Below, piece by piece: positions 44,495 to 64,000 of a stretch of DNA of 64,000 bases. The DNA lies in NCBI RefSeq assembly GCF_902713615.1, contig NC_052158.1:32467990-32531989 (forward strand), in the 5' to 3' direction. Every line of letters begins with the position of its first letter. Position 1 is the stretch's first letter. Under the pieces are notes generated by a model. The model was not told where the DNA came from and did not search any database. It saw nothing but the letters and a program-made list of their open reading frames with translations. This stretch comes from Scyliorhinus canicula. Its lineage: Eukaryota. Position numbers and translations under genes: made by a program.

Positions 44495-44634
44495 CCGGCA
44501 ACTGATGATGCCTCAAGTTGTATTTACCTGATTGGATGATTCACAATATTGCAGAAAAGTTTGTTTCTGAACCTGTTTTGTGTCTATTCTGCCGGTAACT
44601 GATGATTCTTACAGCCTCGTTATTCTGATTGGTT
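44495..44634 (+). promoter_or_regulatory. MHC-type promoter: two X-Y modules plus an S-like box
   Basis: CCGGCAACTGATG-20 nt-CTGATTGG (44495-44535) and CCGGTAACTGATG-20 nt-CTGATTGGTT (44592-44634); GAACCT 17 nt before the second X box; 130-270 bp upstream of the leader ATG. Confidence 0.75.
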
Positions 44635-44766
44635 CAATTATATTTTGTGTCCAATCTGATTGATTCACTGTAAACAGGACAAGGCCCAACTTCCGAGTTG
44701 AAAAGTTTACTTTTCTTGGAGAAAGATTTCTTTCAATTTTTTTCCTCCAGCCTGAGGGAAGCAACA

Positions 44767-44815
44767 ATGATTGGACTGATGGCGCTGCTCCTTGTGTGTG
44801 GAGAGGTGTCTGCAG
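44767..44815 (+). CDS. MHC class I heavy chain, exon 1 (signal peptide MIGLMALLLVCGEVSA, phase 1)
   Basis: ATG with A at -3; hydrophobic leader ending VSA; G|GTAAGT donor; phase 1 joins 63344 to give G-S-H-S. Confidence 0.85.
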
Positions 44816-45330
44816 GTAAGTGATGGGGTGTGAGAAGGGCAGAGCCAGACTGGGTACTGGGGCATTAACCCTGGGTCAGTGAGTGATGGGGTGTGAGAGG
44901 GGCAGAGCCAGACTGGGTACTGGGGCATTAACCCTGGGTCAGTGAGTGATGGGGTGTGAGAGGGGCAGAGCCAGGCTGGGTACTGGGGCATTAACCCTGG
45001 GTCAGAGTGATGGGGTGTGAGAGGGGCAGAGGCAGGCTGGGTACTGGGGCATTAACCCTGGATCAGTGAGTGATGGGGTGTGAGAGGGGCAGAGCCAGGC
45101 TGGGTACTGGGGCATTAACCCTGGATCAGTGAGTGATGGGGTGTGAGAAGGGCAGAGCCAGGCTGGGTACTGGGACATTAACCCTGGGTCAGTGAGTAAT
45201 GGGGTGTGAGAAAGGCAGAGCCAGGCTGGGTATTGGGGCATTAACCCTGGGTCAGTGAGTGATGGGGTGTGAGAGGGGCAGAGCCAGGCTGGGTACTGGG
45301 GCATTAACCCTGGGTCAGCGAGTGAAGGGG
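44816..45330 (+). repeat. 63-bp tandem repeat (~8 units) starting at the intron-1 donor
   Basis: Period read directly (44881 to 44944). Confidence 0.95.
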
Positions 45331-45569
45331 TGTACTGGGTACTGGGGCTGTGGATGAGGGAGGTTATGGGTTGTGAGGGAACTGAGGGTAGGGACATGGG
45401 GCAGAAGAGTGGAGGGAGAGAGGGAGCGGATGGTGGAATACAGAAAGCGTGTTCACCCTGAACTTTCTGCAATTAAATCCTGCTTGATGGCTACCTAAAA
45501 TTTCCCCCCATGTGCTCCATATTCCTTCCCCAACAAAAATCAAACTCAATTTTGAAATTTCCAGATGAA

Positions 45570-45747
45570 TATAAATAGGGGGGATGTCAGAGGTAGGTTC
45601 TTTACCCAGAGAGCAGTGAGGGCATGGAATGCACTGCCTGTGGAAGTAGTTGAGTCGGAAACATTAGGGACCTTCAAGCGGCTATTGGATAGGTACATGG
45701 ATTACGGTAGAATGATGGGGTGTAGATTAATTTGTTCATAATCTAGG
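45570..45747 (+). mobile_element. CR1 3'-end fragment; the rest lies at 60718-60810, after the L1 insertion
   Basis: TTCTTTACCCAGAGAGCAGTGAGGGCATGGAATGCACTGCC..; continues GGACAAAAGATCGGCACAACATCG..TTCTATGTTCTA. Confidence 0.85.
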
Positions 45748-48027
45748 GACTTTCGGTTGCGGCTATGCAGAGCTAAGTTGCACGTTCGGCAGCTCCCGCT
45801 TAGAACGGACTTTTGGGCTCTTTTCAGGTCCTCCAATGGCAATTTTTCGACATTTCCCGGTGTGGGAAGGAGTTTGCAGCATTCCCCCGACAGTGTATGG
45901 CTTGGACCAGGAGCGAGGCGACTAAAAATGTGGTGGTGAAGCCAAATAAAGTGTGAGGGAAGAAAAGCAAGATGGCGGCGGGCGGAGACGAAGCAGCGTG
46001 GATGCAGTGGGCGGAGAAGCAACAGGAGGCTCTCCAGCGCTGCTTCAGGGAGCTTAAAGCGGACCTGCTGGAGTCGATGAAGGCTTTCATTGATAACTTG
46101 CTGGAGACCCAGGCGGCCCAGGGGGTGGCAATCCGCGAGGTCCGACAGAAGGTCTCGGAACACGAAGACGAGATCTTGGGCGCTCCACAAGAAATGGCAG
46201 GAGCGGTTCGAGGAGATGGAGAATCGGTCGAGGCGGAAGAATCTGCAGATCCTGGGCCTCTCGGAGAGGCTGGAGGGGTCGGACGTGAGGGCCTATGTGG
46301 TCACTATGTTAAACACGCTGATAGGAGCGGGGTCCTTTCAGGGGCCCCTGGAGCTGGAAGGGGCCCATAGAGTGCTGGAGAGGAGGCCCAAGGCTAACGA
46401 CCTGCCGCGGGTGGTGCTGGTGCAGTTTCACCGATTCGCTGATCGGGAGTATGTCCTCAGGTGGGCCAAGAGAGAGCGGAGCAGCAGGTGGGAGAACACG
46501 GAGGTTCGAATTTATCAGGACTGGAGTGCGGAGGTGGCGAAGAAGCGGGACGGGTACAACTGGACGAAGTCGGTGCTGCACAGGAAGGGGGTGAAGTTCG
46601 GCATGTTGCAGCCGGCGTGTCTGTGGGTCACCTACAACGACCGGCATCATTATTTTGAGTCCCCAGAGGAGGCGTGGGCCTTTGTTCAGGCCGAGAAGTT
46701 GGACAGAAACTGAGGGTCGGCATGGGGGCCATGCATGGGGTAGTCGGGGATTGCTAAGGTTGTGTTACACTTCGATTGGGGGTTCTTTTTGTTGCTGGTA
46801 TGTTCAAGGGGGAGATGGAGTGTGTAGAGGGGGTCGGGACGGGGGTCTGCCGCAGCGGGGAACGGGCCGAGCGTGGGGTGTAGGCGCTTGGCTGGCCACG
46901 GAGGGGTTATGGCTAGTCGGCGGGGGAGGGGGGAGGGCTGCCCCCTGATCCGGCTGATAACCTGGAACATAAGGGGACTGAACGGGCCGATTAAGCGGGC
47001 CTGGGTGTTTGCGCACCTGAAGGGGCTGAAGGCGGATGTGTTCATGCTCCAGGAGACACACCTGAAGGTGGCGGACCAGGTAAGATTGAGGAAGGGGTGG
47101 GTAGGCCAGGTGTTCCATTCAGGGCTAGATGCAAAAACTCAGGTGGTGGCGATTCTGGTGGGAAAGAGGGTTTCGTTCGAGGTGTCGAGCATTGTGGCAG
47201 ATAATGGCGGCAGGTACATAATGGTAAGTGGTAAGTTACAAGGGGTGAGGGTGGTACTGGTTAATGTTTATGCCCCGAACTGGGACGATGCGGGTTTTAT
47301 GCAGCGCACGCTAGGCCGAATCCCGGACCTGGAAGTGGGGGGGTCTAATAATGGGGGGAGACTTCAACACGGTGTTGGATCCAACACTGGATCGCTACGG
47401 GCAGGAGGCCGGCGGCGGCTAGAGTACTGAGTGGGTTTATGGACCAGATGGGAGGGGTAGATCCTTGGAGATTTGCAAGGCCGAGGGCTAGGGAATTCTC
47501 ATTCTTCTCACATGTTCATAAGGCCTATTCCCGGATCAATTTCTTCATTATGAGTCGGGCGCTGATCACGAGGGTAGGGGATACCGAGTACTCAGCGATT
47601 GCCATTTCAGATCATGCCCCGCATTGGGTAGACTTGGAGCTGGGGGAGGAGATAGACCAGCGCCTGCTGTGGCGCTTGGATGAGGAGGTGAGCGAGCAGG
47701 TTCACGGCAGCATTGAGAGATACCTGGGGGCTAACAACAACGGGGAGGTTTGAGTGGGGACAGTCTGGGAGGCGGTGGAGGTGGGGGAGATGGTGACGGT
47801 GGACTGGAGGTACGCGGAGGAGCCGGAGTAGGGACTGTTGAGGGAGAGGCGTAGCCTCCAGGCCAAATTCGACCAGTTGACCACCAGGAAGGCGGAGGTG
47901 CAGTGGAGGAAGGCCCAGGAGGCGATCTATGAACATAGAACATAGAACATAGAACGATACAGCGCAGTACAGGCCCTTCGGCCCTCAATGTTGCACCGAC
48001 ATGGAAAAAAACTAAAGGCCATCTAAC

Positions 48028-50930
48028 CTACACTATGCCCTTATCATCCATATGCTTATCCAATAAACTTTTAAATGCCCTCAATGTTGGCGAGTTCACT
48101 ACTGTTGCAGGTAGGGCATTCCACGGCCTCACCACTCTTTGCGTAAAAAACCCACCTCTGACCTCTGTCCTATATCTATTACCCTTCAATTTAAGGCTAT
48201 GTCCCCTCGTGATAGCCACCTCCATCCGCGGGAGAAGGCTCTCGCTGTCCACCGTATCTAACCCTCTGATCATTTTGTATGCCTCTATTAGGTCACCTCT
48301 TAACCTTCTTCTCTCTAACGAAAACAACCTCAAGTCCATCAGCCTTTCCTCATAAGATTTTCCCTCCATACCAGGCAACATCCTGGTAAATCTCCTCTGC
48401 ACCCGTTCCAAAGCTTCTACGTCCTTCCTATAATGGGGCGACCAGAACTGTACGCAATACTCCAAATGCGGCCGTACTAGAGTTTTGTACAACTGCAACA
48501 TGACCTCATGGTTCCGGAACTCAATCCCTCTACCAATAAAGGCCATCACACCATAGGCCTTCTTCACAACCCTATCAACCTGTGTGGCAACTTTCAGGGA
48601 TCTATGTACATGGACACCGAGATCCCTCTGCTCATCCACACTACCAAGAATTTTACCATTAGCCAAATATTCCGCATTCCTGTTATTCTTTCCAAAGTGA
48701 ATCACCTCACACTTCTCCACATTAAACTCCATTTGCCACCTCTCAGCCCAGCTCTGCAGCTTATCTATGTCCCTCTGTAACCTGCAACATCCTTCCGCAC
48801 TGTCTACAACTCCACCGACTTTAGTGTCGTCTGCAAATTTACTTACCCATCCTTCTGCTCCCTCCTCTAGGTCATTTATAAAAATGACAAACAGCAACGG
48901 CCCCAGAACAGATCCTTGTGGTACGCCACTCGTAACTGAACTCCATTCTGAACATTTCCCATCAACCACCACTCTCTGTCTTCTTTCAACTAGCCAATTT
49001 CCGATCCACATCTCTAAATCACCCTCAATCCCCAGCCTCCGTATTTTCTGCAATAGCCGACCGTGGGGAACCTTATCAAACGCTTTACTGAAATCCATAT
49101 ACACCACATCAACTGCTTTACCCTCGTCCACCTGTTCAGTCACCTTCTCAAAGAACTCGATAAGGTTTGTGAGGCATGACCTACCCTTCACAAAACCATG
49201 CTGACTATCCCTAATCATATTATTCCTATCTAGATGATTATAAATCGTATCTTTTATAATCCTCTCCAAGACTTTACCCACCACAGATGTTAGGCTCACC
49301 GGCCTATAGTTACCGGGGTTATCTCTACTCCCCTTCTTGAACAAAGGGACCACATTTGCTATCCTCCAGTCCTCTGGCACTATTCCTGTAGCCAATGATG
49401 ACCTAAAAATCAAAGCCAAAGGCTCAGCAATCTCTTCCCTGGCTTCCCAGAGAATCCTAGGATAAATCCCATCAGGCCCCGGGGACTTATCTATTTTCAC
49501 CTTGTCCAGAATTGCCAACACTTCTTCCCTACTCACCTCAATGCCATCTATTCTAATAGCCTGGGTCTCAGCATTCTCCTCCACAATATTATCTTTTTCC
49601 TGAGTGAATACTGACAAAAAGTATTCATTTAGTATCTCGCTTATCTCCTCAGCCTCCACACACAACTTTCCACCACTGTCCTTGACTGGCCCTACTCTTA
49701 CCCTAGTCATTCTTTTATTCCTGACATACCTATAGAAAGCTTTTGGGTTTTCCTTGATCCTACCTGCCAAAGTCTTCTCATGTCCCCTCCTTGCTCGTCT
49801 TAGCTCTCTCTTTAGATCCTTCCTCGCTTCCCTGTAACTATCAAGCGCCCCAACTGAAACTTCACGCCTCATCTTCACATAGGCCTCCTTTTTCCTCTTA
49901 ACAAGAGATTCCACTTCTTTGGTAAACCACGGTTCCCTCGCTCTACCCTTTCCTCCCTGTCTGACTGGTACGTACTGATCAAGAACACGCAATAGCTTTT
50001 CCTTGAACAAGCTCCACATATCCAGTGTGCCCAACCCTTGCAGCCTACTTCTCCAACCTACACATCCTAAGTCATGTCTAATGGCATCATAATTGCCCTT
50101 CCCCCAGCTATAACTCTTGCCCTGCGGGGTATACTTATCCCTTTCCATCACTAATGTAAAGGTCACCGAATTGTGGTCACTGTCTCCAAAGTGTTCACTT
50201 ACCTCCAGATCTAACACCTGGCCTGGTTCATTACCCAAAACCAAATCCAAAGTGGCCTCACCTCTTGTTGGCCTGTCAACATATTGTGTCAGAAAACCCT
50301 CCTGCACACATTGTACAAAGAACGACCCATCCAATGTACTCGAACTATATCTTTTCCAGTCAATATTAGGAAAGTTAAAGTCTCCCATAACAACTACCCT
50401 GTTACTTTCGCTCTTTTCCAGAATCATCTTCGCCATCCTTTCCTCTACATCTCTAGAACTATTAGGTGGCCTATAGAAAACTCCCAGCAGGGTGACCTCT
50501 CCTTTCCTGTTTCTAACCTCAGCCCATACTACCTCGGAAGAAGAGTCCCCATCTTGCACCCTTTCTGCCACCGTAATACTGTCCTTGACTAGCAACGCCA
50601 CACCTCCCCCTCTTTTGCCCCCTTCTCTGACTTTACTAAAGCACCTAAACCCCGGAACCTGCACAACCATTCCTGTCCCTGCTCTATCCATGTCTCTGAA
50701 ATGGCCACAACATCGAAGTCCCAGGTACCAACCCATGCTGCCAGTTCCCCTACCTTATTTCGTATACTCCTGGCATTGAAATAGACACACTTCAAACCAC
50801 CTACCTGAACACTGCCGCTTTCCTGCGAAGTCAAATCTGTGCTCCTGACCTCTCTACTCTCAATCTCTCGCACCCCAAAACTACAATCCAGGTTCCCATG
50901 CCCCTGCTGAATTAGTTTAAACCCCCCCAA
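48028..50930 (-). pseudogene. CR1 ORF2 (AP endonuclease plus RT), open except one 1-nt frameshift near 50664
   Basis: YFNARSIRNK/ISETW, YRPPNS, GDFNFP, LDLVL, SDHN; KSPGPDG, NYRPVSLTS, DFSKAFDKVPH, GVPQGSVLGP, KFADDTK; 902-aa open stretch. Confidence 0.95.
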
Positions 50931-51871
50931 AGAGTACTAACAAATCTCCCCCCCAGGATATTGGTGCCCCTTAGGTTCAGATGTAGACCATCCTGTCTAT
51001 AGAGGTCCCACCTTCCCCAGAAAGAGCCCCAGTTATCCAGAAATCTGAATCCCTCCCGCCTGCACCATCCCTGTAGCCACGTGTTTAATTGCTCTCTCTC
51101 CCTATTCCTCGTCTCACTATCACGTGGCACGGGCAACAACCCAGAGATAACAACTCTGTTTGTTCTCGCTCTGAGCTTTCATCCTAGCTCCCTAAAGGCC
51201 TGCCTGACATCCTTGTCCCCTTTCCTACCTATGTCGTTAGTGCCAATGTGGACTACGACTTGGGGCTGCTCCCCCTCCCCCTTAAGGACCCGAAAAACAC
51301 GATCCGAGCCATCACTTACCCTTGCACCTGGGAGGCAACATACCAAACGTGAGTCTCTCTCGCTCCCACAAAATCTCCTATCTGTGCCCCTGACTATTGA
51401 GTCCCCAATTACTAATGCTCTGCTCCTCTCCCCCCTTCCCTTCTGAGCAACAGGGATAGACTCCGTGCTAGAGTTCCGCACCCCATGGCTTACCCCTGGT
51501 AAGTCGTCCCCCCCACAAGTATCCAGAACGGTATACTTGTTACTCAGGGGAACGACCGCAGGGGGTCCCTGCACTGTCTGCTTCTTCCCAGTCCCTCTTA
51601 CAGTTACCCATCTATCTCCAGTCTTTGGTGTAACTACTTCCCTGAAGCTCTTATCTATGACCACCTCTGCCTCCCGAATGATCCGAAGTTCATCCAACTC
51701 CAGCTCCAGTACCATAACTCGGTCTTGTAGGAGCTGGAGCTGGCTGCACTTCCTGCAGGTAAAATCAGCAGGGACACTAACAGCATCCCTCACCTCAAAC
51801 ATCCTGCAGGAGGAACATTGCACTACCTTCCCTGCCATCCCACTTAATTTCAACCAAGTTCTGGTAAACAA
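50912..51871 (-). pseudogene. CR1 ORF1: CxxC..CxxC finger, coiled coil, SGNH/GDSL esterase domain; one in-frame TGA (51179-51181)
   Basis: CSSC..CRKC; VIGDSIV, LPGA, HIGTND, DGLHLN; reading through TGA gives FRELG*KLRARTNRVVISGLLPVP. Confidence 0.92.
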
Positions 51872-52123
51872 ATATAAAACAAATAAAAAAAATAATAATA
51901 TAATATAGCACTTACCTGCTCACCCCAATGGGTCTTATTATTAGGTTAGAGGAGGAGGGCGGGTGGGAGACACTACACGTGTAGTGTCTCGGGTATCCTC
52001 TCCACCACAATTTATTGGCTAGGAGAAAATCCTTCCCAGAAGTCCGCGGGTCGTACTTCCGGTTCCCGCCTTATATTATCTTTGCTCCCACTGGCACCCC
52101 GCCGCTCTCAATGTGTCCCCTCC

Positions 52124-52937
52124 CGCTCTTTTCAATGTCCCGGCTGTCTTACCTCTCGCGCTCTTTTCAATGTCCTGGCTGTCTCTCCTCCCGCGCTGTT
52201 TTCAATGTCCCGGCTGTCTTACCTCTCGCGCTCTTTTCAATGTCCCGGCTGTCTCTCCTCTCGCGCTGTTTTGAATGTCCCGGCTGTCTTGCCTCTCGCG
52301 CTCTTTTCAATGTCCCGACTGTCTCTCCTCTCGCGCTGTTTTGAATGTCCCGGCTGTCTTACCTCTCGCGCTCTTTTCAATGTCCCGGCTGTCTTACCTC
52401 TCGCGCTCTTTTCAATGTCCTGGCTGTCTTACCTCCCGCGCTGTTTTCAATGTCCCGGCTGTCTTACCTCTCGCGCTCTTTTCAATGTCCCGGCTGTCTC
52501 TCCTCTCGCGCTGTTTTCAATGTCCTGGCTGTCTCTCCTCTCGCGCTCCTTTCAATGTCCTGGCTGTCTCTCCTCTCGCGCTGTTTTGAATGTCCCGGCT
52601 GTCTTACCTCTCGCGCTCTTTTCAATGTCCTGGCTGTCTCTCCTCTCGCGCTGTTTTGAATGTCCCGGCTGTCTTGCCTCTCGCGCTCTTTTCAATGTCC
52701 CGACTGTCTCTCCTCTCGCGCTGTTTTGAATGTCCCGGCTGTCTTACCTCTCGCGCTCTTTTCAATGTCCCGGCTGTCTTACCTCTCGCGCTCTTTTCAA
52801 TGTCCTGGCTGTCTTACCTCCCGCGCTGTTTTCAATGTCCCGGCTGTCTTACCTCTCGCGCTCTTTTCAATGTCCCGGCTGTCTCTCCTCTCGCGCTCTT
52901 TTCAATGTCCTCTCGCGCTGTTTTCAATGTCCATTCA
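52124..52937 (-). repeat. 35-bp tandem array (~23 units) at the CR1 5' end; minus-strand unit GAGCGCGAGAGGTAAGACAGCCGGGACATTGAAAA
   Basis: Lies inside the boundaries of the CR1 insertion. Confidence 0.92.
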
Positions 52938-55345
52938 ATGAGTATGGGGAAAAGGCAAGCCGGTTGCTGGCGCATCAGCTTCGGAAGCGGGATGCAGTTT
53001 GGGAGATTGTGGGAGTTAAGGACAGGAGGGGGAGTGTGGCGCGAAGTGGGGTTGACATCAATGGGGTCTTCAGGGACTTTTATGAGGAACTGTATTGGTC
53101 CGTGCCCACACTGGAGGAAGGAGGAATGGGTCGCTTTCTGGACCAACTGAGGTTCCCGAAGGTGGAGGAAGGACTGGTGGTGGGTTTGGGGGCTCCGATT
53201 GGGCTGGAGGAGCTGACCAAAAGGATAGGGAGCATGCAGGGGGGGAAGGCACCGGGGCCGGATGGTTTCCCGGCCGAATTTTACAGAAAGTATGTGGATT
53301 TGCTGGGCCCGTTGTTGGTTAGGACCTTCAATGAGGCAAGGGAGGGTGGGGCTTTGCCCCCGACGATGTCCAGGGCACTTATTTCCTTGATCCTGAAGCG
53401 GGACAAGGACCCCCTGCAGTGTGGGTCTTACAGGCCGATTTCGCTGTTAAATGTGGATGCTAAGATGCTGGCGAAGGTCTTAGCCTCGAGAATTGAGGAT
53501 TGTGTACCGCAGGTCATTCACCAAGACCAGACGGGGTTCGTGAAGGGGAGGCAATTGAATGCGAATGTGCGGAGGCTCCTAAACGACATTATGATGCCGG
53601 CAAGTGAGGGGGAGGCGGAGATAGTGGCGGCGATGGATGCTGAGAAGGTCTTTGATCGGGTAGAGTGGGGGTACTTGTGGGAGGTGGAGGTTCGGGTTTG
53701 GGGAGGGGTTCATCAGGTGGGTCAGATTGTTGTATGAGGCCCCGGTGGCGAGTGTAGCCACAAGCAAGAGGAGGTCTGAGTACTTTCGGCTGTATCGAGG
53801 GACAAGGCAGTGGTCCCCCCTGTCCTCCCTGCTCTTCGCACTGGCGATTGGACCCCTGGCTATGGCACTGAGGGAGTCGAGGAACTAGAGGGGGCTGGTG
53901 CGGGGTGGTGAGGAGCATAGGGTATCGCTCTATGCGGACGACCTGCTACTTTATGTCGCGGACCTGGTGGGGGGGGGGGGATGCCGGAGGTAATGAGGAT
54001 CCTCAGGGAGTTCGGGGAATTTTCAGGGTATAAGCTCAACATGTGGAAGAGCGAGCTGTTCATGGTTCACCCAGGAGACCAGGAGAGGGGGATTGGTGAG
54101 CTCCCACTAAAAAGGGCGGAGAGGAGCTTTAGATATTTGGGGGTCGAGGTAACCAGGAGCTGGGGGCCCCTGCATAGATTTAATTTCACAAGGCTGGTGG
54201 AGCAGATGGAGGAGGAGTTCAAGAGGTGGGATGCGTTACCACTGTCCTTGGCGGGTAGGGTGTAGTCAGTGAAGATGATGGTGAGACGGTGCTCCCGAGG
54301 TTTTTGTTTCTGTTCCTGTGCCACCCCATTTTTATCCTGAAGGCCTTTTTTTAACGGGTCAATGGGAGCATAACAGGGTTTGTATGGGCATGTGGTGCTC
54401 TGATGGTGAGACGAGTTTCCTGGAGCGGAGCAGGGATGGGGGTGGGGGGGGGGGGGGGAGTGGGGGCTGGCGCTGCCTAATCTCTGTGGATACTACTGGG
54501 CCGCTAATGTGGCGATGGTGCGCAAGTGGGTGCTGGAGGGGGCGGCATGGAAGAGGCTGGAAACGGCGTCTTGTGAGGGAACGAGTTTGGAGGCGCTGGC
54601 AATGGTGCCGCTGCCGCTCCCTCCAATGAGGTATACCACGAGCCCGGTGGTGGCGGCTACCCTCAAAATTTGGGGGCAGTGGAGGCGGCACAGGAGGGAG
54701 TTGGGGGCCTCGGTGTGGACCCCGATACAGGGAAACCATTGGATTGTCCCAGGGAGGATAGATGGAGGGTTTGCGGGGTGGCACAGGGCAGGGTTAAGGA
54801 GGTTGGGGGACCTATTCGTGGATGGGAAGTTCGCAAGCCTGGGTGAGCTGGAGGAGAGGTATGGGCTTCACCCCGGGAAACGCCTTTAGGTACCTACAGG
54901 TAAGGGCGTTTGTTAGGCGGCAAGTGGTGGGATTTCCGCTGCTGCCGCCACGCACGGTACAGGATAGGGTGCTCTGGGGGGTGTGGGTTGGAGAGGGGAA
55001 GATTTTGGCAATATACCAGGTGATGCAGGAGGAGGAGGAGGCCTCGGTGGAGGAGCTGAAAGGTAAGTGGGAGGAGGAGCTAGGGGAGGTGATTGAGCAG
55101 GGAACTTGGGAAGATGGCTTAGGGAGAGTCAACTCTTCCTCTTCATGTGCGAGGCTCAGCCTCATACAGTTCAAGGTGATGCATAGGGCACATATGACCA
55201 GGACAAGGATGAGCTGGTTTTTTGGGGGTGAGGACAGGTGTGTTAGGTGCTCGGGGAGCCCAGCAAACCACACCCATATGTTCTGGGTTGCAGAGGAGCT
55301 GGGAGTGCAGGAGGCGAAAGAGGCCGGTACTCTGGCCTTTGCGTC

Positions 55346-58300
55346 TGATGTACCGTCAATTGGACTCGAATCGTGAAGAAGTTCCATATATCAGGCTTTA
55401 ATCAACTAGTTGTGTGCCCGACAATCGACTTACAGAGAAAGGCCGACTGCCGGGTCCTACGGGTTCTTATACCCCGCCTCATAGGCGGGACTACTTGCCT
55501 CTCGGCCAATGGGTGAGCAGTCACATGACCAGCCTCAACCAATCAGCAGAGAGGCACATGACCGACCTGAGGCAATGGGCAGCGGGTGCTCTGCACCAAT
55601 GGCAGATAGGTACCGTAAACCGCCTAGTTATACCACCACGTTCACCCCTTGTGGAGAAAGAAGCCGGGAGAGGTGGGGGGGCAGGAGTAAGAGGGTGGGG
55701 GGGCGTTGATTGACTGGTGGTATGACTAGAGAGAATGAGGTGTACCGAGGTAAATGGCGGCTGCCCACTGGCTCGCGACGACTGTGCAGATACAAGAACA
55801 GCAATGAACAATACATAATTAGAAAACAAATCCAAAAACATGTGCAACTTGTACATTGGAATTCTGAATGACACAAGGAGTCCGATAAAAGTCCAGTGGA
55901 ACATCAGATTGACGCAATCAGTCTGTCGGGCGCCCTCGATGTTCTGCTGTACCGTCGCAGCGGTGCAGGTGACGTCGGGCCGGTGGCCGTCCTTGACTCC
56001 GTGAGCGGCCGTCGTGATCCTGTGTCCGTACCCCTGGTCGGTGCTCGCGAAGCTCTGGCCGGGGGGAGGGGGTTCCTGTGCGCTGGGTTGTGGGGACGCC
56101 GGGGGGGGGGGGGGGAACTGGGCGGAGGGTGTTGATGTGGGGGGTTGGGACCGTACGCCGGCGGGTGCCAGATCTCGAAGGGAGACAGTGTCCTGCCGAC
56201 CGTCGGGATACTCCACGTACGCGTACTGCGGGTTGGCGTGGAGTAACTGGACTCGTTCCACCAATGGGTTGGACTTGTGCACCCGCACATGCTTCCGGAG
56301 CAAGATGGGCCCGGGTGTGGTCAGCCAAGTCGGGAGTGGGGATCCTGCGGACGACTTCCTAGGGGAAAAAAGAAGACGTTTGTGAGGTTTTTGGTTTGTG
56401 GTAGTGCAGAGGAGAGACCGAATTGCATGGAGGGCGTCGGGATGACTTCTTGCCAGTGGGAGATAGGGAGATCTCTGGACCGTAGGGCCAGTAGGACGAT
56501 CTTCCATTCTCCCGCTCGACCTGCCCGTTACCCCAAGGGTTATAACTGGTCGTCCTGCTAGAGGCATTGCACCTGCTGAGCAGGAATTGATGCAGCTCGT
56601 TGCTCATAAAGGAGGTCCCCCGGTTGCTGTGGATGTACGCGGGGTAACCAAACAGGGAGAAAATGGAGAGGAGGGCCTTGATGACGGTTGTCGTGGTCAT
56701 GTCGGGGCAGGGGATGGCGAAAGGGGAGCGGGAGTACTCGTCAATCACACTTAAGAAGTAGGTATTGTGGTTGTTGGAGGGGAGGGGACCCTTGGAGTCC
56801 ATACTAAGACGTTCAAAAGGGCAGGATGCCTTTAACATATGCGCTTACTCGGGGCGGTAAAAGTGCGGTTTGCACTCTGCGCAAATGTGGCAATCCCTGG
56901 TCATGGTCCTGACCTCAATGGAGTAGGGCAGGTTGCGGGTCTTGATGAAGTGATAGAAGCGGGCTACCCCTGGATGGCAGAGGTCCGCATGGAGGGTGCG
57001 GAGGCGGTCAACCTGCGTTCTGGCGCAGGTACCGCGGGACAGGGCATCAGGAGGCTCGTTGAGCTTCCCAGTACGATAGAAGATATCATAGTTGTACGTG
57101 GACAACTCGATCCGCCACCGCAAGATCTTGTCGTTCTTGATCTTGCCCCTCTGTGCATTGTCAAACATTTTTTTTGGAAATGTTTTTTATTGAGTTTTCA
57201 TATTTTATATCCAACAAATTACAAATTATTAGAAAAAAAACACGCAAAAATTAACATGTATATTTACAGGCAAGCATCTTCATAATAACAACTGTGGCCA
57301 CCCCCTTTAACCGGCATACATATTTTACGTTCCCCAATATGGCCGAGGCAAATGTTTATAGGCATTGCATTGTCAAACATGACGGCCACAGACCGCTGGT
57401 CTGTGAGGAGGGTGAACCTCCTGCCGGCCAGATAGTGCCTCCAGTATCGCACAGCTTCAACTACGGCCTGTGCCTCCTTTTCCACCGAGGAATGGCGGAG
57501 TTCAGAAGCGTGGAGGGCCCGGGAGAAGAAGGCCACGGGTCTGCCCGCTTGGTTGAGGGTGGCCGCCAGAGCTACGTCAGACGCGTCGCTCTCGACCTGG
57601 AATGGGAGGGACGCATCGTGGCCTTTGCGATATCCGCTTTGATTCGGCTAAAGGCCTGGCGGGCCTCCATCGACAGTGGAAAAGTGTTGGATTGGATGAG
57701 GGGGCGGGCTTTGTCGGCGTAGTTCGGGACCCACTGGGCCTAATAAGAGAAGAAGCCCAGACAGCGTTTAAGGGATTTGAGGGAGTTGGGGAGAGGGAGT
57801 TCCATCAGGGGGCGCATGCGTTCGGGATCGGGGCCTATCACTCCGTTACGCACTACGTAGCCGAGGATGGCTAGACGGTCCGTGCAAAACACGTACTTAT
57901 CCTTATATGTGAGGTTAAGGAGTTTTGCGGTATGGAGGAATTCTTGGAGGTTGATGTCATGGTCCTGCTGGTCATGGCCGCAGATGGTGACGTTATCAAG
58001 ATACGTAAGCCCATAAACCGTATTGGTCAACCATTCGGTCCGTCTCCCATTGGAAGACCGAGACCCCATTTGTGACACTGAATGGAACTCTTAGAAAGTG
58101 ATAGAGGCGCCCATCTGCCTCGAACGGGGTGTACTTGCGGTCACCCGCACGGTTGGGAAGCTGGTGATAGGCGGACTTAAGGTCCACCGTGGAGAAGACT
58201 TTGTACTTTGCGATCCTGTTAACCAGGTCGCAAATACGTGGGCGAGGGTACGCGTCCAGCTGCGTAAACATGTTGATGGTCTGACTGTAGTCAATGACTA

Positions 58301-60285
58301 TTCGGTTTTTCTCCCCAGTCTGAACTACCAGCACTTGTGCCCGCCAGGGCCTGTTTCTGGCCTCGATGACTCCTTCCTTTAGTAGCCTCTGGATCTCGGG
58401 CCTCATGAAGGTCCAGTCCTGGGCACTGTATCGTCTGCTCCTAGTGGCGATGGGTTTGCAATCTGGGGTGAGGTTCGCAAACAAGGAAGGGGGGTCCACT
58501 TTGAGGGACGCAGACAGTAAGGGGTGGAATTCGGCCGCCGAATAGGGCTGCAGGTTGCACTGAAAATGCAGTCTAAGAGTGCCGGTGCGCAGAGACGGGG
58601 GAGGACGAGCAGTTTGTAATTTTTAAAAACCCTGTCCTGGACCGTGAGGTCTGCTACGCAGCACCCGGTGATGTGGACGGAGTGCGAACCTGAGGCTAGA
58701 GCTATCTTATGCTTAACCGGGTGAACGGGGAGCACGCAGCATCTTACTGTATTGGGGTGGACAAAACTCTCTGTGGTCCCAGAGTCTAGTAGGCAGCTCG
58801 TTTCGTGTCCATTGAGAAGGATCTGTGTCATCGCCGTGGAGAGCGTGTGTGGTCGTGACTGGTCGAGAGTCACTGCAGTGAGTCATGGCAGGAGGTCTGG
58901 GTCGTCTTCGCTTGCGGAGTAGTCGCTGGTGGGGTCCTCTGTATTGGTCCAAAATGGCAGTGCCCATTGGCCGCACGTGGAGTCAGTGCCCCAAGATGGC
59001 GGCGCCCGGGACCCACACGTGGCGTCCGGGACCCAAAATGGCGGAGCCCGTGGGTCACTCATGGTGGCTAGAGGCGGGGCAAAGAGGTCCATGGGTCGCT
59101 CGTGGTGGCCGGGAGCGGGGGCAGGGAGGCCTGTGTGCCACGCGGGGCCCTGGAGGAGCGCGGTGGGTGCGATCCGTGGTTGCTGCATGGAACAGCAGTG
59201 ACCGACTTTGATTGACAGGCCACTGAATAGTGACCTTTCTTAGCACAGCTCTTACATACTGCGGAGTGGGCCGGACAGCGTGGGCGGGGTGTGTGGCCAG
59301 GCCACAGAGGTAAGTGGGGCCCCGTGAGCTTATCGAGGCCCCCCGCAGCGCAGGCCTGGGGCTGGGGGTCAGAGTCGGCAGGGAACAGGGGGGGTTGTGT
59401 GCCACGTTGCCTTAGGGGTTGCCGCGCAGCCGGGGGCCTATGTGCGGGCGTTTCGGTCGGCAACCTCCAAAGAGGATGCGAGGGTCCATGCCTCAGCGAG
59501 GCTTAAAGTGTCCTTTTCTAATAGTCGCTGGCATATTGCAGAAGGTTGCAAGCCTGCAACGAAGGCATCCCGAATTAACAGTTCCGTATGTTCTGCCGCA
59601 GTAACTTGCGGGAAGCACAGTTTCTCCCCAAGACAACGAGGGCCCGATAAAATTCATCAAGGGACTCACCGGGGAACTGCTGCCTTGTAGCTAGAAGATG
59701 CCGTGCGTAGACATGGTGAACAGGCCTGAGAAAATGTCCTTTCAGAAGGTCCATGGCCGCGTCATAGTCTTCTTCATCCTGAATCATCGATTAGACGGCG
59801 GTGCCCACGCACGAGTGGAGGATGTGGAGTTTCTGCTCCTTGGTGGGTTGGCTGCCTGCGGTGGAGAGGTAGCTGTTGAAGCACGCCAGCCAATGTTTAA
59901 AAGTTGCTGACGCGTTTGTAGCATGCGGGCTGATGCGGAGGCAGTCTGGTTTGATCCGAAGCTCCATTTCAAAATTCTAGTTGATTAAATTGATGTACCA
60001 TTAATTGGACTCGAGTCGTGAAGAAGTTCCATATATCAGGCTTTAATCAACTAGTTGTGTGCCCGACAGTCGACTTACAGAGAAAGGCCGACTGCCGGGT
60101 CCTACGGGTTCTTACACCCTGCCTCGAAGGTGGGACTACTTGCCTCTCAGCCAATGGGTGAGCAGTCACATGACTAGCCTCAACCAATCAGCAGAGAGGC
60201 ACATGACCGACCTGAGCCAATGGGCAGCGTGTGCTCTGCACCAATGGCAGATAGGTACCATAAACCTCCTAGTTATACCACCACA
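55346..60285 (-). mobile_element. Gypsy (Mag-like) LTR retrotransposon, 4.94 kb, gag-PR-RT-RH-IN, frameshifted
   Basis: 295-bp LTRs (55346-55640, 59991-60285; ~16 differences by manual count); 5-bp TSD GCGTC; PPT AAGGGGTGAA; gag ATG 59967, CX2CX4HX4C knuckle, LLDSGT protease, YLDNV (RT, normally YLDD), SVEKEA RNase H, DSKGP/YNPWGNGQVER integrase. Confidence 0.96.
57169..57365 (-). mobile_element. 197-bp 5'-truncated retroposed insert (LINE 3'-end-like) inside the Gypsy pol
   Basis: 15-bp TSD TGCATTGTCAAACAT (57154-57168, 57366-57380); AATAAA and poly(A) on the minus strand. Confidence 0.88.
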
Positions 60286-60939
60286 GCGTCCCTGGTAGCC
60301 CGGCGGTGGATTCTTCTTCAATGGAGGGATGCGAGGCCCCTAAACGTTGAGTCCTGGATCAATGACATAGCGGGGTTTATCAAATTGGAAAGGGTGAAAT
60401 TTGCTTTGAGGGGTTCGGTACAGGGGTTTTTCAAGTGGTGGCAACCATACCTAGACTTCCTGGCAGAATGGTAGACAACGATCAGTGGCAGCAGCAAACT
60501 GGGGTGGGGGGGGGGGTTTATTTCAATTTATTTCAGTTTTGTTTCTATATATTTTAAGTTTTGTCTGGGTGTATATATTTGCTATGTGTTTGTGCGGGTG
60601 TTAATTTATTATTTTTGTTGCTGAGTTTCCTTTTCACCTTTTACAATTTGTACTTTATATTTTTGTTGTTGATATTTTGCGAAAGCTTTGACAAAAATTA
60701 TTTTTTTTAAAATTCAAAATTTGTTCTTAATCTAGGACAAAAGATCGGCACAACATCGTTGGCCGAAAGGCCTGTTCTGTGATGTATTTTTCTTTGTTCT
60801 ATGTTCTATTCCCAGCAGTTACTGCTTTTTGAGGGAGTTTCAGATTTCCACCACCGTTTTGGTTGAGGACGTTCATGGTTAAACACCAGACAGCAGCCAA
60901 AACGAAGAGAGAGAGAGTGGAGAATATCACAGACTGGGT

Positions 60940-61340
60940 TAGAGAGTCCGGCAGCCACACAGCACAGACTGGGTTAGAGACTCCAGCAGCCGCATTGCAG
61001 ACTGGGTTAGAGATTCCAGCAGCCACACAGCACAGACTGGGTTAGAGACTCCAGCAGCCACATAGCACAGACTGGGTTAGAGATTCCAGCAGCCACATAG
61101 CACAGACTGGGTTAGAGACACCAGCAGCCACGTAGCACAGACTGGGTTAGAGACTCCAGCAGCCACATAGCACAGACTGGGTTAGAGACTCCAGCAGCCA
61201 CATAGCACAGACTGGGTTAGAGACTCCAGCAGCCACATAGCACAGACTGAGTTAGAGACTCCAGCAGCCACACAGCACAGACTGGGTTAGAGACTCCAGC
61301 AGCACACAGCACAGACTGGGTTTGAGACTCCAGCAGCCAC
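60940..61340. repeat. 35-bp tandem repeat CAGCAGCCACATAGCACAGACTGGGTTAGAGACTC
   Basis: About 11 units read directly. Confidence 0.95.
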
Positions 61341-61844
61341 AGAGGATGAGAGAGAGAAATCAGAGCTGGCTGGAGACTTGTACAATTCCTGATCTGACAT
61401 TCTGAGGAACATTGCAAATGTAGGTGCTGGTGTTTTGCATTCATACCCTGATGTCTCTGTGTGGGTGTTGGTGTTTTGCGTTCATACCCTGATGTCCCTG
61501 TGTGGGTGCTGGTGTTTTGGCATTCATACCCTGGTGTCTCTCTGTGTGGGTGTTGGTGTTTTGGGATTCATACCCTGATGTCTCTCTGTGTGGGTGCTGG
61601 TGTTTTGGCATTCATACCCTGGTGTCTCTCTGTGTGGGTGTTGGTGTTTTGGGATTCATACCCTGATGTCTCTCTGTGTGGGTGTTGGTGTTTTGGGATT
61701 CATACCCTGATGTCTCTCTGTGTGGGTGTTGGTGTTTTGACATTCATACCCTGATGTCTCTGCGTGGGTGTTGGTGTTTTGGCATTCATACCCTGATGTC
61801 TCTCTCTGTGTGTCTCCTGCCACATAAAACTGCTCCTCGACCAG

Positions 61845-62028
61845 CATAGAATTTACAGTGCAGCAGGAGGCCATTCGGCCCATCGATTTCACACCGGCCC
61901 TTGGAAAGAACACTACCTAAGCCCACACCTCCACCCTTTCCCCATAACCTAGTAACCCCAAGTAATCTTTTTGGACACTAAGGGCAATTTAGCATGGCCA
62001 ATCCACCTAACCTGCACATATTTGGATC
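61845..62028 (-). mobile_element. HE1-like SINE 3' half
   Basis: GGGCAATTTAGCATGGCCAATCCACCTAACC shared with 42607-42640; CR1-type tail. Confidence 0.75.
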
Positions 62029-62836
62029 CATGGTTGGGACTTGGACAATGTGGATTACTTCCCGTACCTCGGGAGCCTTCTCCTGTTGCGAGCCAACGTT
62101 GTCAACGATATCCAGAATTGACTGCAATCGCCAGAGCAGTCTTCGGTCGCCTGAGAAAGAGAGTGTTCGAAGACCGAGACCTCAAATCCAGCTCCAAGCT
62201 CATGGTCTACAGAGCAGCCATGGTCACCACCCTCCTGTATGCATCAGGAACATGGAAAATGTACTGCAGACACCTTAAATCATTGGAGAGATATCACCAA
62301 CATTACCTCTGCAAAATCCTGCACGTCCACTGACAGGATAGGCGAACCAACGTGAGCATCCTCTCTCAGGCCAATATCCCCAGCATTGAGGCACTGGTCA
62401 CACTCGACCAGCTGCGATGGGTGGGCCACATTGCCCACATTCCCAATGCACGACTTTCGAAACAAGTGCTCTATTCCGAGCTCCGCAATGGCAAGCGATC
62501 ACTAGGAAGGCAGAGGAAACACAACACGGACACTCAGCTCCTTGAATAAATGCAAATCCCCATCGACACGTGGGAATCGCTTGCCTTAGAACACACAAAC
62601 TGGACAAATATCAACCACAAAGTCACCAATCACCTCGAGTGTTATATTGTGGGGCACACGGAGGCCACGTGTAAACAGCGAAAGGAGAGTGCAGAATCTA
62701 GAGCGTACCACCCACCAACCTGCCAACCCTGTGTCAGAGTCTGCAGATTCAGGATTGGACTGTTCAGCCACCGCAGGACCCACCTACCTGTGGAGTGGAA
62801 GCAAGTCATCCGCGACGCTGAGGGACTGCCAAAGAG
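62029..62836 (+). mobile_element. RTE-clade LINE, 3' fragment
   Basis: AVFGRLRKRVF, KLMVYRAA..TLLYASGTW, LERYHQHYLCKIL, TNVSILSQANIPSIE, QLRWVGH, KQVLYSEL..GKR..GRQRK, TWESLA. Confidence 0.88.
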
Positions 62837-63343
62837 ATTCTCTGATGTCTCTGGGTGGATGTTAGTATTTTGGGGTTAATACCCTGATGTCTCTGTGTGG
62901 GTGTTGGTGTTTTGGGATTCATACCCTGTTGTCTCTGTGTGGGTGTTGGTGTTTTGGGATTCATACCCTGATGTCTCTCTGTGTGGGTGTTGATGTTTTG
63001 GGATTCATACCCTGATGCCTCTCTGTGCGGGTGTTGGTGTTTTGGGGTACACCCTGATGTCTCTCTGTCTGGGTGTTGGTGTTTTGGTGTTCATACCATG
63101 ATGTCTCTCTGTGTGGGTGTTGGTGTTTTGGGGGTCATACTCTGATGTCTCTCTGTGGGTGTTGGTGTTTTGGGGGTTATACTCTGATGTCTCTCTGTCT
63201 GGGTGTTGGTGTTTTGGGATTCATACCCTGATGTGTCTGTGTATGTGTGTATTTTTGTCTTGGGGTTCATACCCCGATATATCTCTCATTGTGGGTGTTG
63301 GTCTTTTGGGGTTCAGACCTTGATATCTCTCTCTATTTTTCAG

Positions 63344-63604
63344 GCTCTCACTCTTTCCGGACTTTCCTCACGGGTATGACTCCAATCCCTGGATTTCCGC
63401 AATTTGTGGCTGTCGGCTACGTGGATGATGTCCAGTTTATTGCGTACGACAGCGATCGGAAGGAGTTGATTGCCCGAGAGAAGTGGATGGTGGACAGTGA
63501 GGGGCCTGAGTTCTGGGAACGGAAGAAGCTTCTTGCACAGGAAGGGGAGGAGAATTTCAAATCTGAAATTCCGATCCTCATGTCTTGGACCAACCAGTCA
63601 GGAG
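63344..63604 (+). CDS. MHC class I heavy chain, exon 2 (alpha-1 domain, 87 codons), UAA-like sequence with non-classical residues
   Basis: TTTTTCAG acceptor, G|GTGAGT donor, phase 1-1; GSHSFRTFLT..PQFVAVGYVDDVQFIAYDSD..WM..EGPEFWER..NQS (N86 glycosylation site). Confidence 0.96.
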
Positions 63605-63709
63605 GTGAGTCCTCAATCTCCCAGCACTCGGTTCCAATGGGGAGTACCTCAGAGTGGATCAATCTGGGAGACAGAGGCTGATGGTTGTGGATGGGGCAGT
63701 AAATTATTA

Positions 63710-63845
63710 GATAAAAGCAAATTACGGCAGATGCTGGAATCTGAAGCCGAAGAGAAAATGCTGCAAAATCTCAGCAGGTCTGGCAGCATCTGTAGGGAGA
63801 GAAAGGAGCTGACGATTCGAGTCCAGATGACCTTTTATCAAATCA
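63710..63845 (-). mobile_element. Penelope-type terminal fragment; related copy at ~39400-39520 (+)
   Basis: GCAGATGCTGGAATCTGAA..CTCAGCAGGTCTGGCAGCATCTG; family assignment from memory. Confidence 0.6.
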
Positions 63846-64000
63846 GTAACTGGGTTGTAGCTGGTTGTAAATTACATCGGCTGGGTTTGTATTGTGGGCA
63901 GGGCCACCCAGTGAACCTGCTTCTGATTGGCTGCTTGCATTGTAAGTGGGGCCTCTGGTAGGACTGCCTCTGATTGGTGGCTTGTGTTTCTGATCTACAG

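What the first reader, a model, noticed from the sequence alone, without database searches (positions are those of the whole stretch)
63344..63604. Class I alpha-1 domain has lost all three alpha-1 peptide-terminus anchors
Seen, aligned by eye to HLA numbering: position 7 T (ACT), 59 F (TTC), 84 W (TGG), 63 K; frame, splice sites, GYVDD, W51, W60 and the N86 glycan site are intact. Known: classical molecules keep Y7, Y59 and Y84 (R84 in non-mammals). R84W is a single CpG-type change and Y59F a single change, while Y7T needs two. Inference: a non-classical class I gene derived from a UAA-like ancestor with an altered groove, or an early pseudogene.
Basis: partly seen in the sequence, partly recalled or inferred. 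Interest (0 to 1): 0.7.

Follow-up and report, generated by a model that had tools for sequence, protein, structure and literature searches.

The report
Catshark UBA nonclassical class I exon
This is the intact, transcribed alpha-1 exon of a publicly unannotated copy of the shark UBA family of nonclassical MHC class I genes; its missing peptide-end anchors are real, but one loss is family-wide and the other two recur in relatives, so it is a new member of a known kind.

Summary
Window 63344-63604 (+) is a 261-nt, phase-1 MHC class I alpha-1 exon with intact AG/GT. It reads T7, F59, K63 and W84 in HLA numbering, with GYVDD, both Trp and the N86 glycan site kept.

It is not a new lineage. In an alpha-1 tree it sits in a supported clade (99/93) with horn shark O19480 and nurse shark O19479, which I take to be the UBA family (named from memory plus a review). 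UBA is multicopy and MHC-linked in catshark (PMC10751288).

- **Y59:** replaced by S/F/A/G/L in all but one of the UBA sequences examined, so this loss is inherited.
- **Y7T and R84W:** private to this gene. Three other UBA genes (basking shark, smooth-hound, horn shark) lost all three anchors too.

Assembled contigs from three studies carry the exon; two leave the genome exactly at both exon borders, so it is spliced. One individual has Leu at position 59.

A matching leader exon and promoter lie 18.5 kb upstream. The alpha-2 exon should begin at 64001, one base past the window, and could not be read. No public protein contains this exon. Working class Ib gene or expressed decaying copy therefore stays open.

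The scan also noted an altered-anchor class I-like gene about 8.5 Mb away on this chromosome.

The parts
44495..44716 (+). Putative class I promoter: two X-box-like elements each followed by CTGATTGG (Y box), then an ISRE-like AGTTTACTTTTC just upstream of the leader exon
Evidence: Read directly. CTGATTGG at 44528 and 44625. Function not tested.
44767..44815 (+). Leader (signal peptide) exon, MIGLMALLLVCGEVSA plus the first base of Gly1; GT donor at 44816
   Evidence: tblastn of catshark UBA proteins: 94% identical to the leader of P0266 and 88% to P0159. Its phase (1) fits exon 2. It is the only class I leader in the window. The RNA contigs carry 'CAG' directly before exon 2, as this exon's end does. 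The join itself was not seen.
44816..63343 (+). Intron 1, 18.5 kb. It opens with 8.2 copies of a 63-bp unit that repeats the start of the intron, with a donor-like GTGAGT in each copy. It holds retroelement ORFs and ends in 35- and 44-bp minisatellites that abut the acceptor.
   Evidence: No other class I exon lies inside it.
63344..63604 (+). Alpha-1 exon (exon 2) of a UBA-family class I gene: T7, F59, K63, W84, N86-Q-S
   Evidence: Spliced contigs in runs X1 and X2 end at exactly these borders.
63361..63363 (+). Codon 7, ACT = Thr. It is Tyr in 32 of the 36 distinct UBA alpha-1 rows, this gene included, and in all UAA.
63511..63513 (+). Codon 59 (HLA numbering), TTC = Phe. The UBA family has S/F/A/G/L here. 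Run X2 reads TTA = Leu.
63586..63588 (+). Codon 84, TGG = Trp. It is Arg in 28 of the 36 distinct UBA alpha-1 rows, this gene included, and in all UAA.
63605..64000 (+). Intron 2, 396 nt, with a high-copy SINE-like insert at about 63708-63827. The last bases, ...tgtttctgatctacag, are the acceptor of the alpha-2 exon, which should start at 64001.
   Evidence: Both ends align to intron 2 of a related shark gene in L001: 72% over the first 100 nt and 86% over the last 37 nt, ending at its CAG|GGATCCAT. The X2 contig continues 213 nt past 63604. The X4 contig retains 63605-63740.

Best explanation
The exon is the alpha-1 domain of one more copy of the shark UBA family. UBA is a multicopy, MHC-linked, nonclassical (class Ib) offshoot of the classical UAA genes.

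Shown: the gene has its own class-I-type promoter region and leader exon 18.5 kb upstream. It is transcribed, and exon 2 is spliced at both borders. An acceptor for alpha-2 sits at the very end of the window.

The UBA ancestor had already given up Tyr59 (and Thr143 in alpha-2). This copy has in addition replaced Tyr7 by Thr and Arg84 by Trp.

Inferred: if the downstream exons are intact, the product is a class I heavy chain that folds normally. The structural core, the Trp residues and the N86 glycan site are kept. But it cannot clamp either end of a peptide in the canonical way. Of the four tyrosines that hold the peptide N-terminus in the A pocket, both alpha-1 ones have lost their hydroxyl here (position 7 is Thr, position 59 is Phe). 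The F-pocket end has lost the Arg that holds the C-terminal carboxylate in non-mammalian class I, and a bulky indole sits there instead. Such a groove would hold ligands by their middle or by hydrophobic contacts (open-ended peptides or non-peptide ligands), or stay empty and act as a recognition or stress-type ligand.

My sub-confidences: UBA membership 0.9; transcribed and spliced 0.85; encodes a working protein about 0.45.
For: - Domain and numbering: PF00129 E 2e-17; gapless alignment to nurse shark UAA 6LUP.
- Family: the closest proteins are catshark, smooth-hound and horn shark class I proteins at 65-81% identity, all gapless over 88 residues. In the alpha-1 tree the exon lies in a clade with support 99/93 that holds O19480 and O19479 and excludes UAA of Triakis and nurse shark.
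- Family signatures are shared: K63 and a non-Tyr residue at 59. The REQW motif reads REKW here.
- Family-wide anchor pattern: Y59 is replaced in all but one UBA row, T143 becomes I/F/V, and K146 varies, while all UAA rows keep every anchor.
- The terminal branch length is ordinary: 0.26 against a median of 0.24.
- Pairwise dN/dS against the relative in L001 is 0.35.
- Expression: the X1 contig (292 nt) and the X2 contig (495 nt) match only 63341-63605/4 and then continue with other letters. The X4 contig is spliced at the 5' border.
- Leader exon and promoter.
- Literature: UBA is multicopy in catshark and forms its own class Ib cluster flanked by C4 and RXRB (PMC10751288). UBA derives from UAA (PMC12562908). 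Arg84 contacts the peptide's C-terminal carboxylate in non-mammalian class I (PMC9372762).
Against: - The alpha-2, alpha-3, transmembrane and tail exons lie outside the window and could not be read, so an intact reading frame is unproven.
- No public protein contains this exon. Searches at full length and at fragment length found only three other catshark UBA genes. The 2023 catshark MHC map flags only three MHC-Ib genes in the UBA cluster. An annotation pipeline may have judged this locus non-coding or a pseudogene.
- One of the three contigs retains intron 2, which would end the protein about 25 residues after alpha-1.
- The exon departs at 5 of 36 family-conserved columns. That puts it third to fifth of 35 family members, which fits relaxed constraint as well as a change of function.
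- Position 59 differs between individuals (Phe/Leu).
- An oligo-dT RNA run showed no reads on the exon (X11).
- The names UBA for O19480/O19479 rest on my memory of Bartl et al. 1997 plus the review's citation. I could not read the primary papers.
Confidence: 0.5

Rival explanations
1. Expressed pseudogene: a decaying copy in a birth-and-death multigene family. It is still transcribed from an intact promoter and still spliced, but it no longer makes a useful heavy chain. Y7T, R84W and the other unusual replacements are then neutral drift.
For: - No protein model with this exon exists in the public collections.
- Only three MHC-Ib genes are flagged in the catshark UBA cluster.
- An intron-2-retaining contig exists.
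- There are 5 departures at conserved family columns plus R84W.
- The 18.5-kb first intron is full of repeats and retroelements.
- The family does contain frameshifted members, for example smooth-hound P0036.
- Position 59 varies between Phe and Leu among individuals.
Against: - Both visible exons, all four visible splice sites, the signal peptide, the structural core and the glycan site are intact.
- The terminal branch is not long.
- The unusual replacements include three groove-floor or groove-end positions (5, 7, 84), not core positions.
- Transcripts were found in three studies.
Confidence: 0.35
2. A 5' cassette rather than a complete gene: leader plus alpha-1 (plus alpha-2) with no alpha-3/TM exons of its own, spliced to the downstream exons of a neighbouring UBA gene.
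For: The public models XP_038673428 and XP_038673429 (P0266, P0159) are 'isoforms' of one catshark gene. They differ throughout leader, alpha-1 and alpha-2 but share identical alpha-3, TM and tail. One isoform's range extends far upstream of the other. Earlier notes place a provirus 14 kb beyond the window's end.
Against: Those models may simply be prediction artefacts in a cluster of near-identical exons. Nothing here shows what lies beyond alpha-2 for this gene.
Confidence: 0.08
3. Assembly or sequencing artefact, or a classical (UAA) gene misread.
For: None beyond the oddity of the residues.
Against: Contigs from three studies reproduce T7 and W84 exactly. The tree separates the exon from UAA with support 99/93.
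Confidence: 0.02

Closest known systems
Shark UBA nonclassical MHC class I family (Bartl et al. 1997: horn shark O19480, nurse shark O19479; catshark XP_038673428-31 and XP_038672762; cloudy catshark P0175, 81% identical in alpha-1)
   Same: Same clade (99/93). Gapless 88-residue alpha-1. Same leader type (MIGLMALLL.C.EVSA). K63, a non-Tyr residue at 59, the ERKK motif, and the N86 glycan site. Intron 2 is homologous at both ends to that of a relative.
   Different: Thr7 and Trp84 instead of Tyr7 and Arg84. Also L5F, E20Q, P44A and Q47K at otherwise conserved columns. No public protein model. Alpha-2 onward unseen.
UBA members that also lack all three alpha-1 anchors: basking shark P0170 (N7, S59, Q84), smooth-hound P0172 (I7, A59, L84), horn shark P0199 (I7, S59, L84)
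   Same: Loss of Tyr7 together with Arg84 on the Tyr59-less family background.
   Different: Different replacement residues and, on the best tree, separate origins. P0172 and P0199 have also lost the N86 glycan site and sit on long branches, whereas this gene keeps the site and has an ordinary branch.
Classical shark class I, UAA (nurse shark Gici-UAA*01, PDB 6LUP; Triakis UAA)
   Same: Same fold and domain length, 56% identity in alpha-1, same exon phases.
   Different: UAA keeps Y7, Y59, R84, T143, K146, W147, Y159 and Y171 in every sequence tabulated. This exon has none of the three alpha-1 anchors.
Other vertebrate class Ib molecules with degenerate terminus anchors (for example Xenopus XNC, teleost L lineage, mammalian CD1/MR1); named from general knowledge
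   Same: Class I fold with the peptide-terminus hydrogen-bond network given up.
   Different: No orthology. Ligand type for UBA is unknown.

Membership tests
MHC class I heavy chain, alpha-1 domain (Pfam PF00129) | Profile match above the curated cut-off, with the correct exon phase and length | tested here: met
   63.7 bits against a cut-off of 28.3, profile positions 2-88. 261-nt phase-1 exon.
Shark UBA nonclassical class I family | Falls in the clade of the founding UBA sequences, apart from UAA | tested here: met
   Clade of 36 rows with support 99/93 that holds O19480 and O19479 and excludes UAA. This uses alpha-1 only, 88 columns. The name UBA for those two entries comes from memory plus PMC12562908.
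Shark UBA nonclassical class I family | Family signature residues in alpha-1: non-Tyr at 59, Lys63, the REQW / ERKK motifs | tested here: met
   F59, K63 and ERKK are present. REQW reads REKW.
Shark UBA nonclassical class I family | Family signature in alpha-2 (T143 replaced by I/F/V; Y159 and Y171 kept; Cys101-Cys164) | not testable with these tools
   The alpha-2 exon starts at 64001, outside the window.
Shark UBA nonclassical class I family | Location in the multicopy UBA cluster flanked by C4 and RXRB | tested here: inconclusive
   Earlier notes place two more class I genes 93 kb and 158 kb upstream, which fits a cluster. The window's chromosomal coordinates are unknown and it holds no flanking marker gene.
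Classical class I (UAA-type, peptide termini clamped) | Y7, Y59 and R84 (Y84 in mammals) in alpha-1 | tested here: not met
   T7, F59 and W84, confirmed in contigs of three studies.
Pseudogene | A disabling change (stop, frameshift, lost splice site or lost start) in a coding exon | tested here: inconclusive
   None in the leader exon, the alpha-1 exon, their splice sites or the intron-2 acceptor. The remaining exons are unseen. No public protein model exists.

The most novel reading that the evidence does not exclude
Within the UBA family, loss of the N-terminal anchor Tyr7 has happened several times, and each time together with loss of the C-terminal anchor Arg84 (4 of 4 cases, against 4 of 32 where Tyr7 is kept). 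This catshark gene would be an expressed, otherwise well-kept example. It would point to a recurrent, selected switch to a groove open or indifferent at both ends (class-II-like overhanging peptides or non-peptide ligands), not to decay.
Probability: 0.15. Interest if true: 0.55.

Novelty: new member of a known kind. Interest (0 to 1): 0.27.

Why it matters
It adds a fourth, apparently unannotated, transcribed UBA copy to the catshark MHC map, which lists three. It also shows that the 'lost anchors' are mostly a family trait.

The one point that could interest comparative immunologists is the repeated joint loss of Tyr7 and Arg84 in UBA genes of four shark orders. If that is selected, it would say something about what these old class Ib molecules bind. 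On present evidence it is a modest annotation-level result.

Tried and rejected
- **Downstream exons.** The look-up of encoding contigs for the neighbouring catshark gene and for a cloudy catshark fragment returned no DNA ('file too large').
- **Fragment search.** A protein search (82-260 aa) meant to catch proteins called on transcript contigs found only three relatives and no exact match.
- **Metagenome scan.** A scan of metagenome contigs with the exon's own peptides found nothing.
- Its table of loose ends did not print the letters beyond 63344/63604, so the 213 nt of alpha-2 in the X2 contig stay unread.
- **Primary papers.** The UBA/UCA/UDA papers (PMC7002201, PMC8454915, PMC7039333) are not held.
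- **Window coordinates.** I tried to place the window on chromosome NC_052158.1 from earlier notes' offsets and the 2023 gene table. The offsets did not fit uniquely, so I claim no coordinates.
- **Coupling of Y7 and R84 loss.** The phylogenetically independent-pairs test had only 2-4 pairs and no power. The raw Fisher p of 0.0012 ignores relatedness and is only suggestive.
- **Structure or complex prediction.** Not run. The groove needs alpha-2, which is unknown, and a chimera with a paralogue's alpha-2 would not answer the question.
- **Rejected readings.** Assembly error and classical gene.

Full report
**1. What is in the sequence**

Window 63344-63604 on the + strand is a 261-nt exon bounded by 'cag' and 'gtgagt', with phase 1 at both ends. 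Read from 63346 it gives 86 codons without a stop. It matches Pfam MHC_I at E 2e-17 over profile positions 2-88, the alpha-1 half.

The best solved structure is 6LUP, aligned without any gap. PMC8236899 identifies 6LUP as nurse shark Gici-UAA*01.

- Thr7 (ACT, 63361-63363)
- Phe59 (TTC, 63511-63513)
- Lys63
- Trp84 (TGG, 63586-63588)
- N86-Q-S, GYVDD and both Trp are present.

The window has no N and no other class I exon except a leader exon at 44767-44815.

**2. Gene anatomy**

The leader exon encodes MIGLMALLLVCGEVSA plus one base of Gly1. It ends in a GT donor and is 94% and 88% identical to the leaders of two annotated catshark relatives.

Upstream of it, 44495-44716 carries two X-like elements, each followed by a CTGATTGG Y box, and an ISRE-like element.

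Intron 1 is 18.5 kb. It opens with 8.2 copies of a 63-bp unit that repeats the start of the intron. It contains retroelement ORFs. It ends in minisatellites that run up to the acceptor.

Intron 2 is only 396 nt. Its first 100 nt and last 37 nt align to intron 2 of a related shark gene on L001, a JGI 'metagenome' contig that is really shark genomic DNA. That intron ends CAG|GGATCCAT at the start of an alpha-2 exon. The window's last letters...tgtttctgatctacag, are therefore the alpha-2 acceptor. Alpha-2 should begin at 64001, one base beyond what I can read.

**3. Is it real and expressed?**

Contigs from three studies were laid on 63300-64000.

|---|---|---|---|---|
| X1 | 292 nt | 63341-63605 | 0 | 11 and 16 further letters that do not fit the genome |
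| X2 | 495 nt | 63341-63604 | 3 | 18 letters before, 213 after |
| X4 | 416 nt | 63341-63740 | 0 | 16 unfitting letters before; runs on into intron 2 |

All three alignments start three bases before the exon. Those bases are CAG, as at the end of the leader exon. This is the pattern of spliced RNA. X1 and X2 have both introns removed. X4 has intron 1 removed and intron 2 retained.

The residues T7 and W84 are reproduced in all three. X2 reads TTA (Leu) at codon 59 and has a synonymous change at 63534. One oligo-dT run (X11) had no reads on the exon. Depths are low (5-18).

**4. Which family**

An exhaustive profile search and a word-indexed search returned shark class I proteins. The closest in alpha-1 are cloudy catshark P0175 (81%), P0160 and catshark P0159 (76%), horn shark O19480 (74%) and smooth-hound P0001 (72%). 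All are gapless over 88 residues.

An alpha-1 tree of 66 rows was built. The exon falls in a clade of 36 rows with support 99/93. That clade contains horn shark O19480 and nurse shark O19479. It excludes UAA of Triakis, dogfish and nurse shark.

From memory of Bartl et al. 1997, those two entries are Hefr-19 and Gici-11, the founders of UBA. The review PMC12562908 cites that paper for UBA, calls UBA an expanded family, and says it derives from UAA. PMC10751288 reports that catshark UBA genes are multicopy. They form a class Ib cluster of their own, flanked by C4 and RXRB. Its supplement flags three MHC-Ib genes there.

Earlier notes of this scan place two more class I genes 93 kb and 158 kb upstream of the window, which fits a cluster.

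**5. The anchors in family context**

I tabulated the canonical anchors over full-length relatives, mapped on 6LUP.

- Every UAA-type row keeps Y7, Y59, R84, T143, K146, W147, Y159 and Y171.
- In the UBA clade, Y59 is S, F, A, G or L in all rows but one.
- T143 is I, F or V, and K146 varies.
- Among the 36 distinct UBA alpha-1 rows, this gene included, Y7 is kept in 32 and R84 in 28.
- W147, Y159 and Y171 are mostly kept.

So the Y59 loss is inherited, while Y7T and R84W are this gene's own. Three other members also lack all three alpha-1 anchors: basking shark P0170 (N, S, Q), smooth-hound P0172 (I, A, L) and horn shark P0199 (I, S, L).

All four Y7 losses come with an R84 loss. Among the 32 distinct sequences that keep Y7, only 4 have lost R84 (raw Fisher p 0.0012). 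On the best tree these are four separate Y7 events. The independent-contrast test has too few pairs to mean anything.

**6. Constraint**

- The exon's terminal branch is 0.26, against a median of 0.24.
- It departs from the family at 5 of 36 columns that are at least 90% conserved: L5F, Y7T, E20Q, P44A and Q47K. That places it third to fifth of 35 members.
- Nei-Gojobori dN/dS against L001 is 0.35 (dS 0.47). This mostly reflects shared history.
- In L001, codon 84 is CGC and codon 7 is TAT. A single CpG step for R84W is possible but not shown.

**7. What is missing**

No protein in the public collections contains this exon.

- The full-length search lists only P0159/P0266, P0161 and P0267/P0192 for this family in catshark.
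- Their 90% clusters have no further members.
- A fragment-length search found no exact match.

Either the locus was called non-coding or a pseudogene, or it was missed. I could not obtain the chromosome beyond 64000.

**8. Verdict**

The thing is a transcribed, apparently unannotated copy of the known UBA nonclassical class I family.

Mechanistically, the two alpha-1 tyrosines that help hold the peptide N-terminus are gone. The arginine that contacts the C-terminal carboxylate in non-mammalian class I (PMC9372762) is replaced by Trp. The family background already lacks T143. Canonical clamping of peptide ends is therefore very unlikely.

Whether the product is a working class Ib molecule with a differently used groove (about 0.45), an expressed decaying copy (about 0.35), or a 5' cassette feeding a neighbour's exons (about 0.08) depends on exons just outside the window. 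The cassette reading is suggested by public 'isoforms' that share alpha-3 to tail but differ in leader, alpha-1 and alpha-2.

It is a new member of a known kind and of modest interest.

Noticed in passing
window 44819-45333: Intron 1 opens with 8.2 tandem copies (95% alike) of a 63-bp unit that repeats the first bases of the intron. Each copy carries a donor-like CA|GTGAGT. Earlier notes describe similar splice-donor minisatellites in introns of neighbouring class I genes and just beyond this window.
   Followed up: partly
window 60924-61341, 61419-61810, 62842-63332: There are three minisatellites in the 3' part of intron 1, one with a 35-bp unit and two with 44-bp units. The last one abuts the polypyrimidine tract and acceptor of the alpha-1 exon, and its unit resembles that tract.
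   Followed up: no
window 63708-63827: A SINE-like insert in intron 2 draws summed contig depths in the thousands up to about 100,000 in runs X1, X2 and X4. It also draws oligo-dT reads, almost all on one strand. It is a very abundant transcribed repeat of this genome.
   Followed up: no
window 63923-63977 and L001 about 560-670: Intron 2 carries repeated CTGATTGG(C)TG motifs (inverted CCAAT / Y-box-like) shortly before the alpha-2 acceptor. The related shark gene in L001 has three of them at the matching place. This may be a conserved intronic element.
   Followed up: no
window 63513: Run X2 reads A instead of C, which turns Phe59 into Leu. A synonymous T>G lies at 63534. This is either an allele or a very recent duplicate.
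   Followed up: partly
proteins P0266 / P0159 (XP_038673428 / XP_038673429): Two public 'isoforms' of one catshark UBA gene differ throughout leader, alpha-1 and alpha-2. They share identical alpha-3, TM and tail. This is either read-through splicing between tandem units or a modelling artefact.
   Followed up: partly
L001 (JGI metagenome 3300026616, contig Ga0262470_19638), 1-1005: A 'metagenome' contig is shark genomic DNA. It carries a complete UBA-type alpha-1 exon (Gly at position 59), a 198-nt intron 2 and an alpha-2 exon. The host species is unknown.
   Followed up: partly
window 7864-9237 and 58406-58882: Long retroelement ORFs are present: a LINE endonuclease/RT-like ORF on the + strand, and a Gypsy-like protease region on the - strand inside intron 1.
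   Followed up: no
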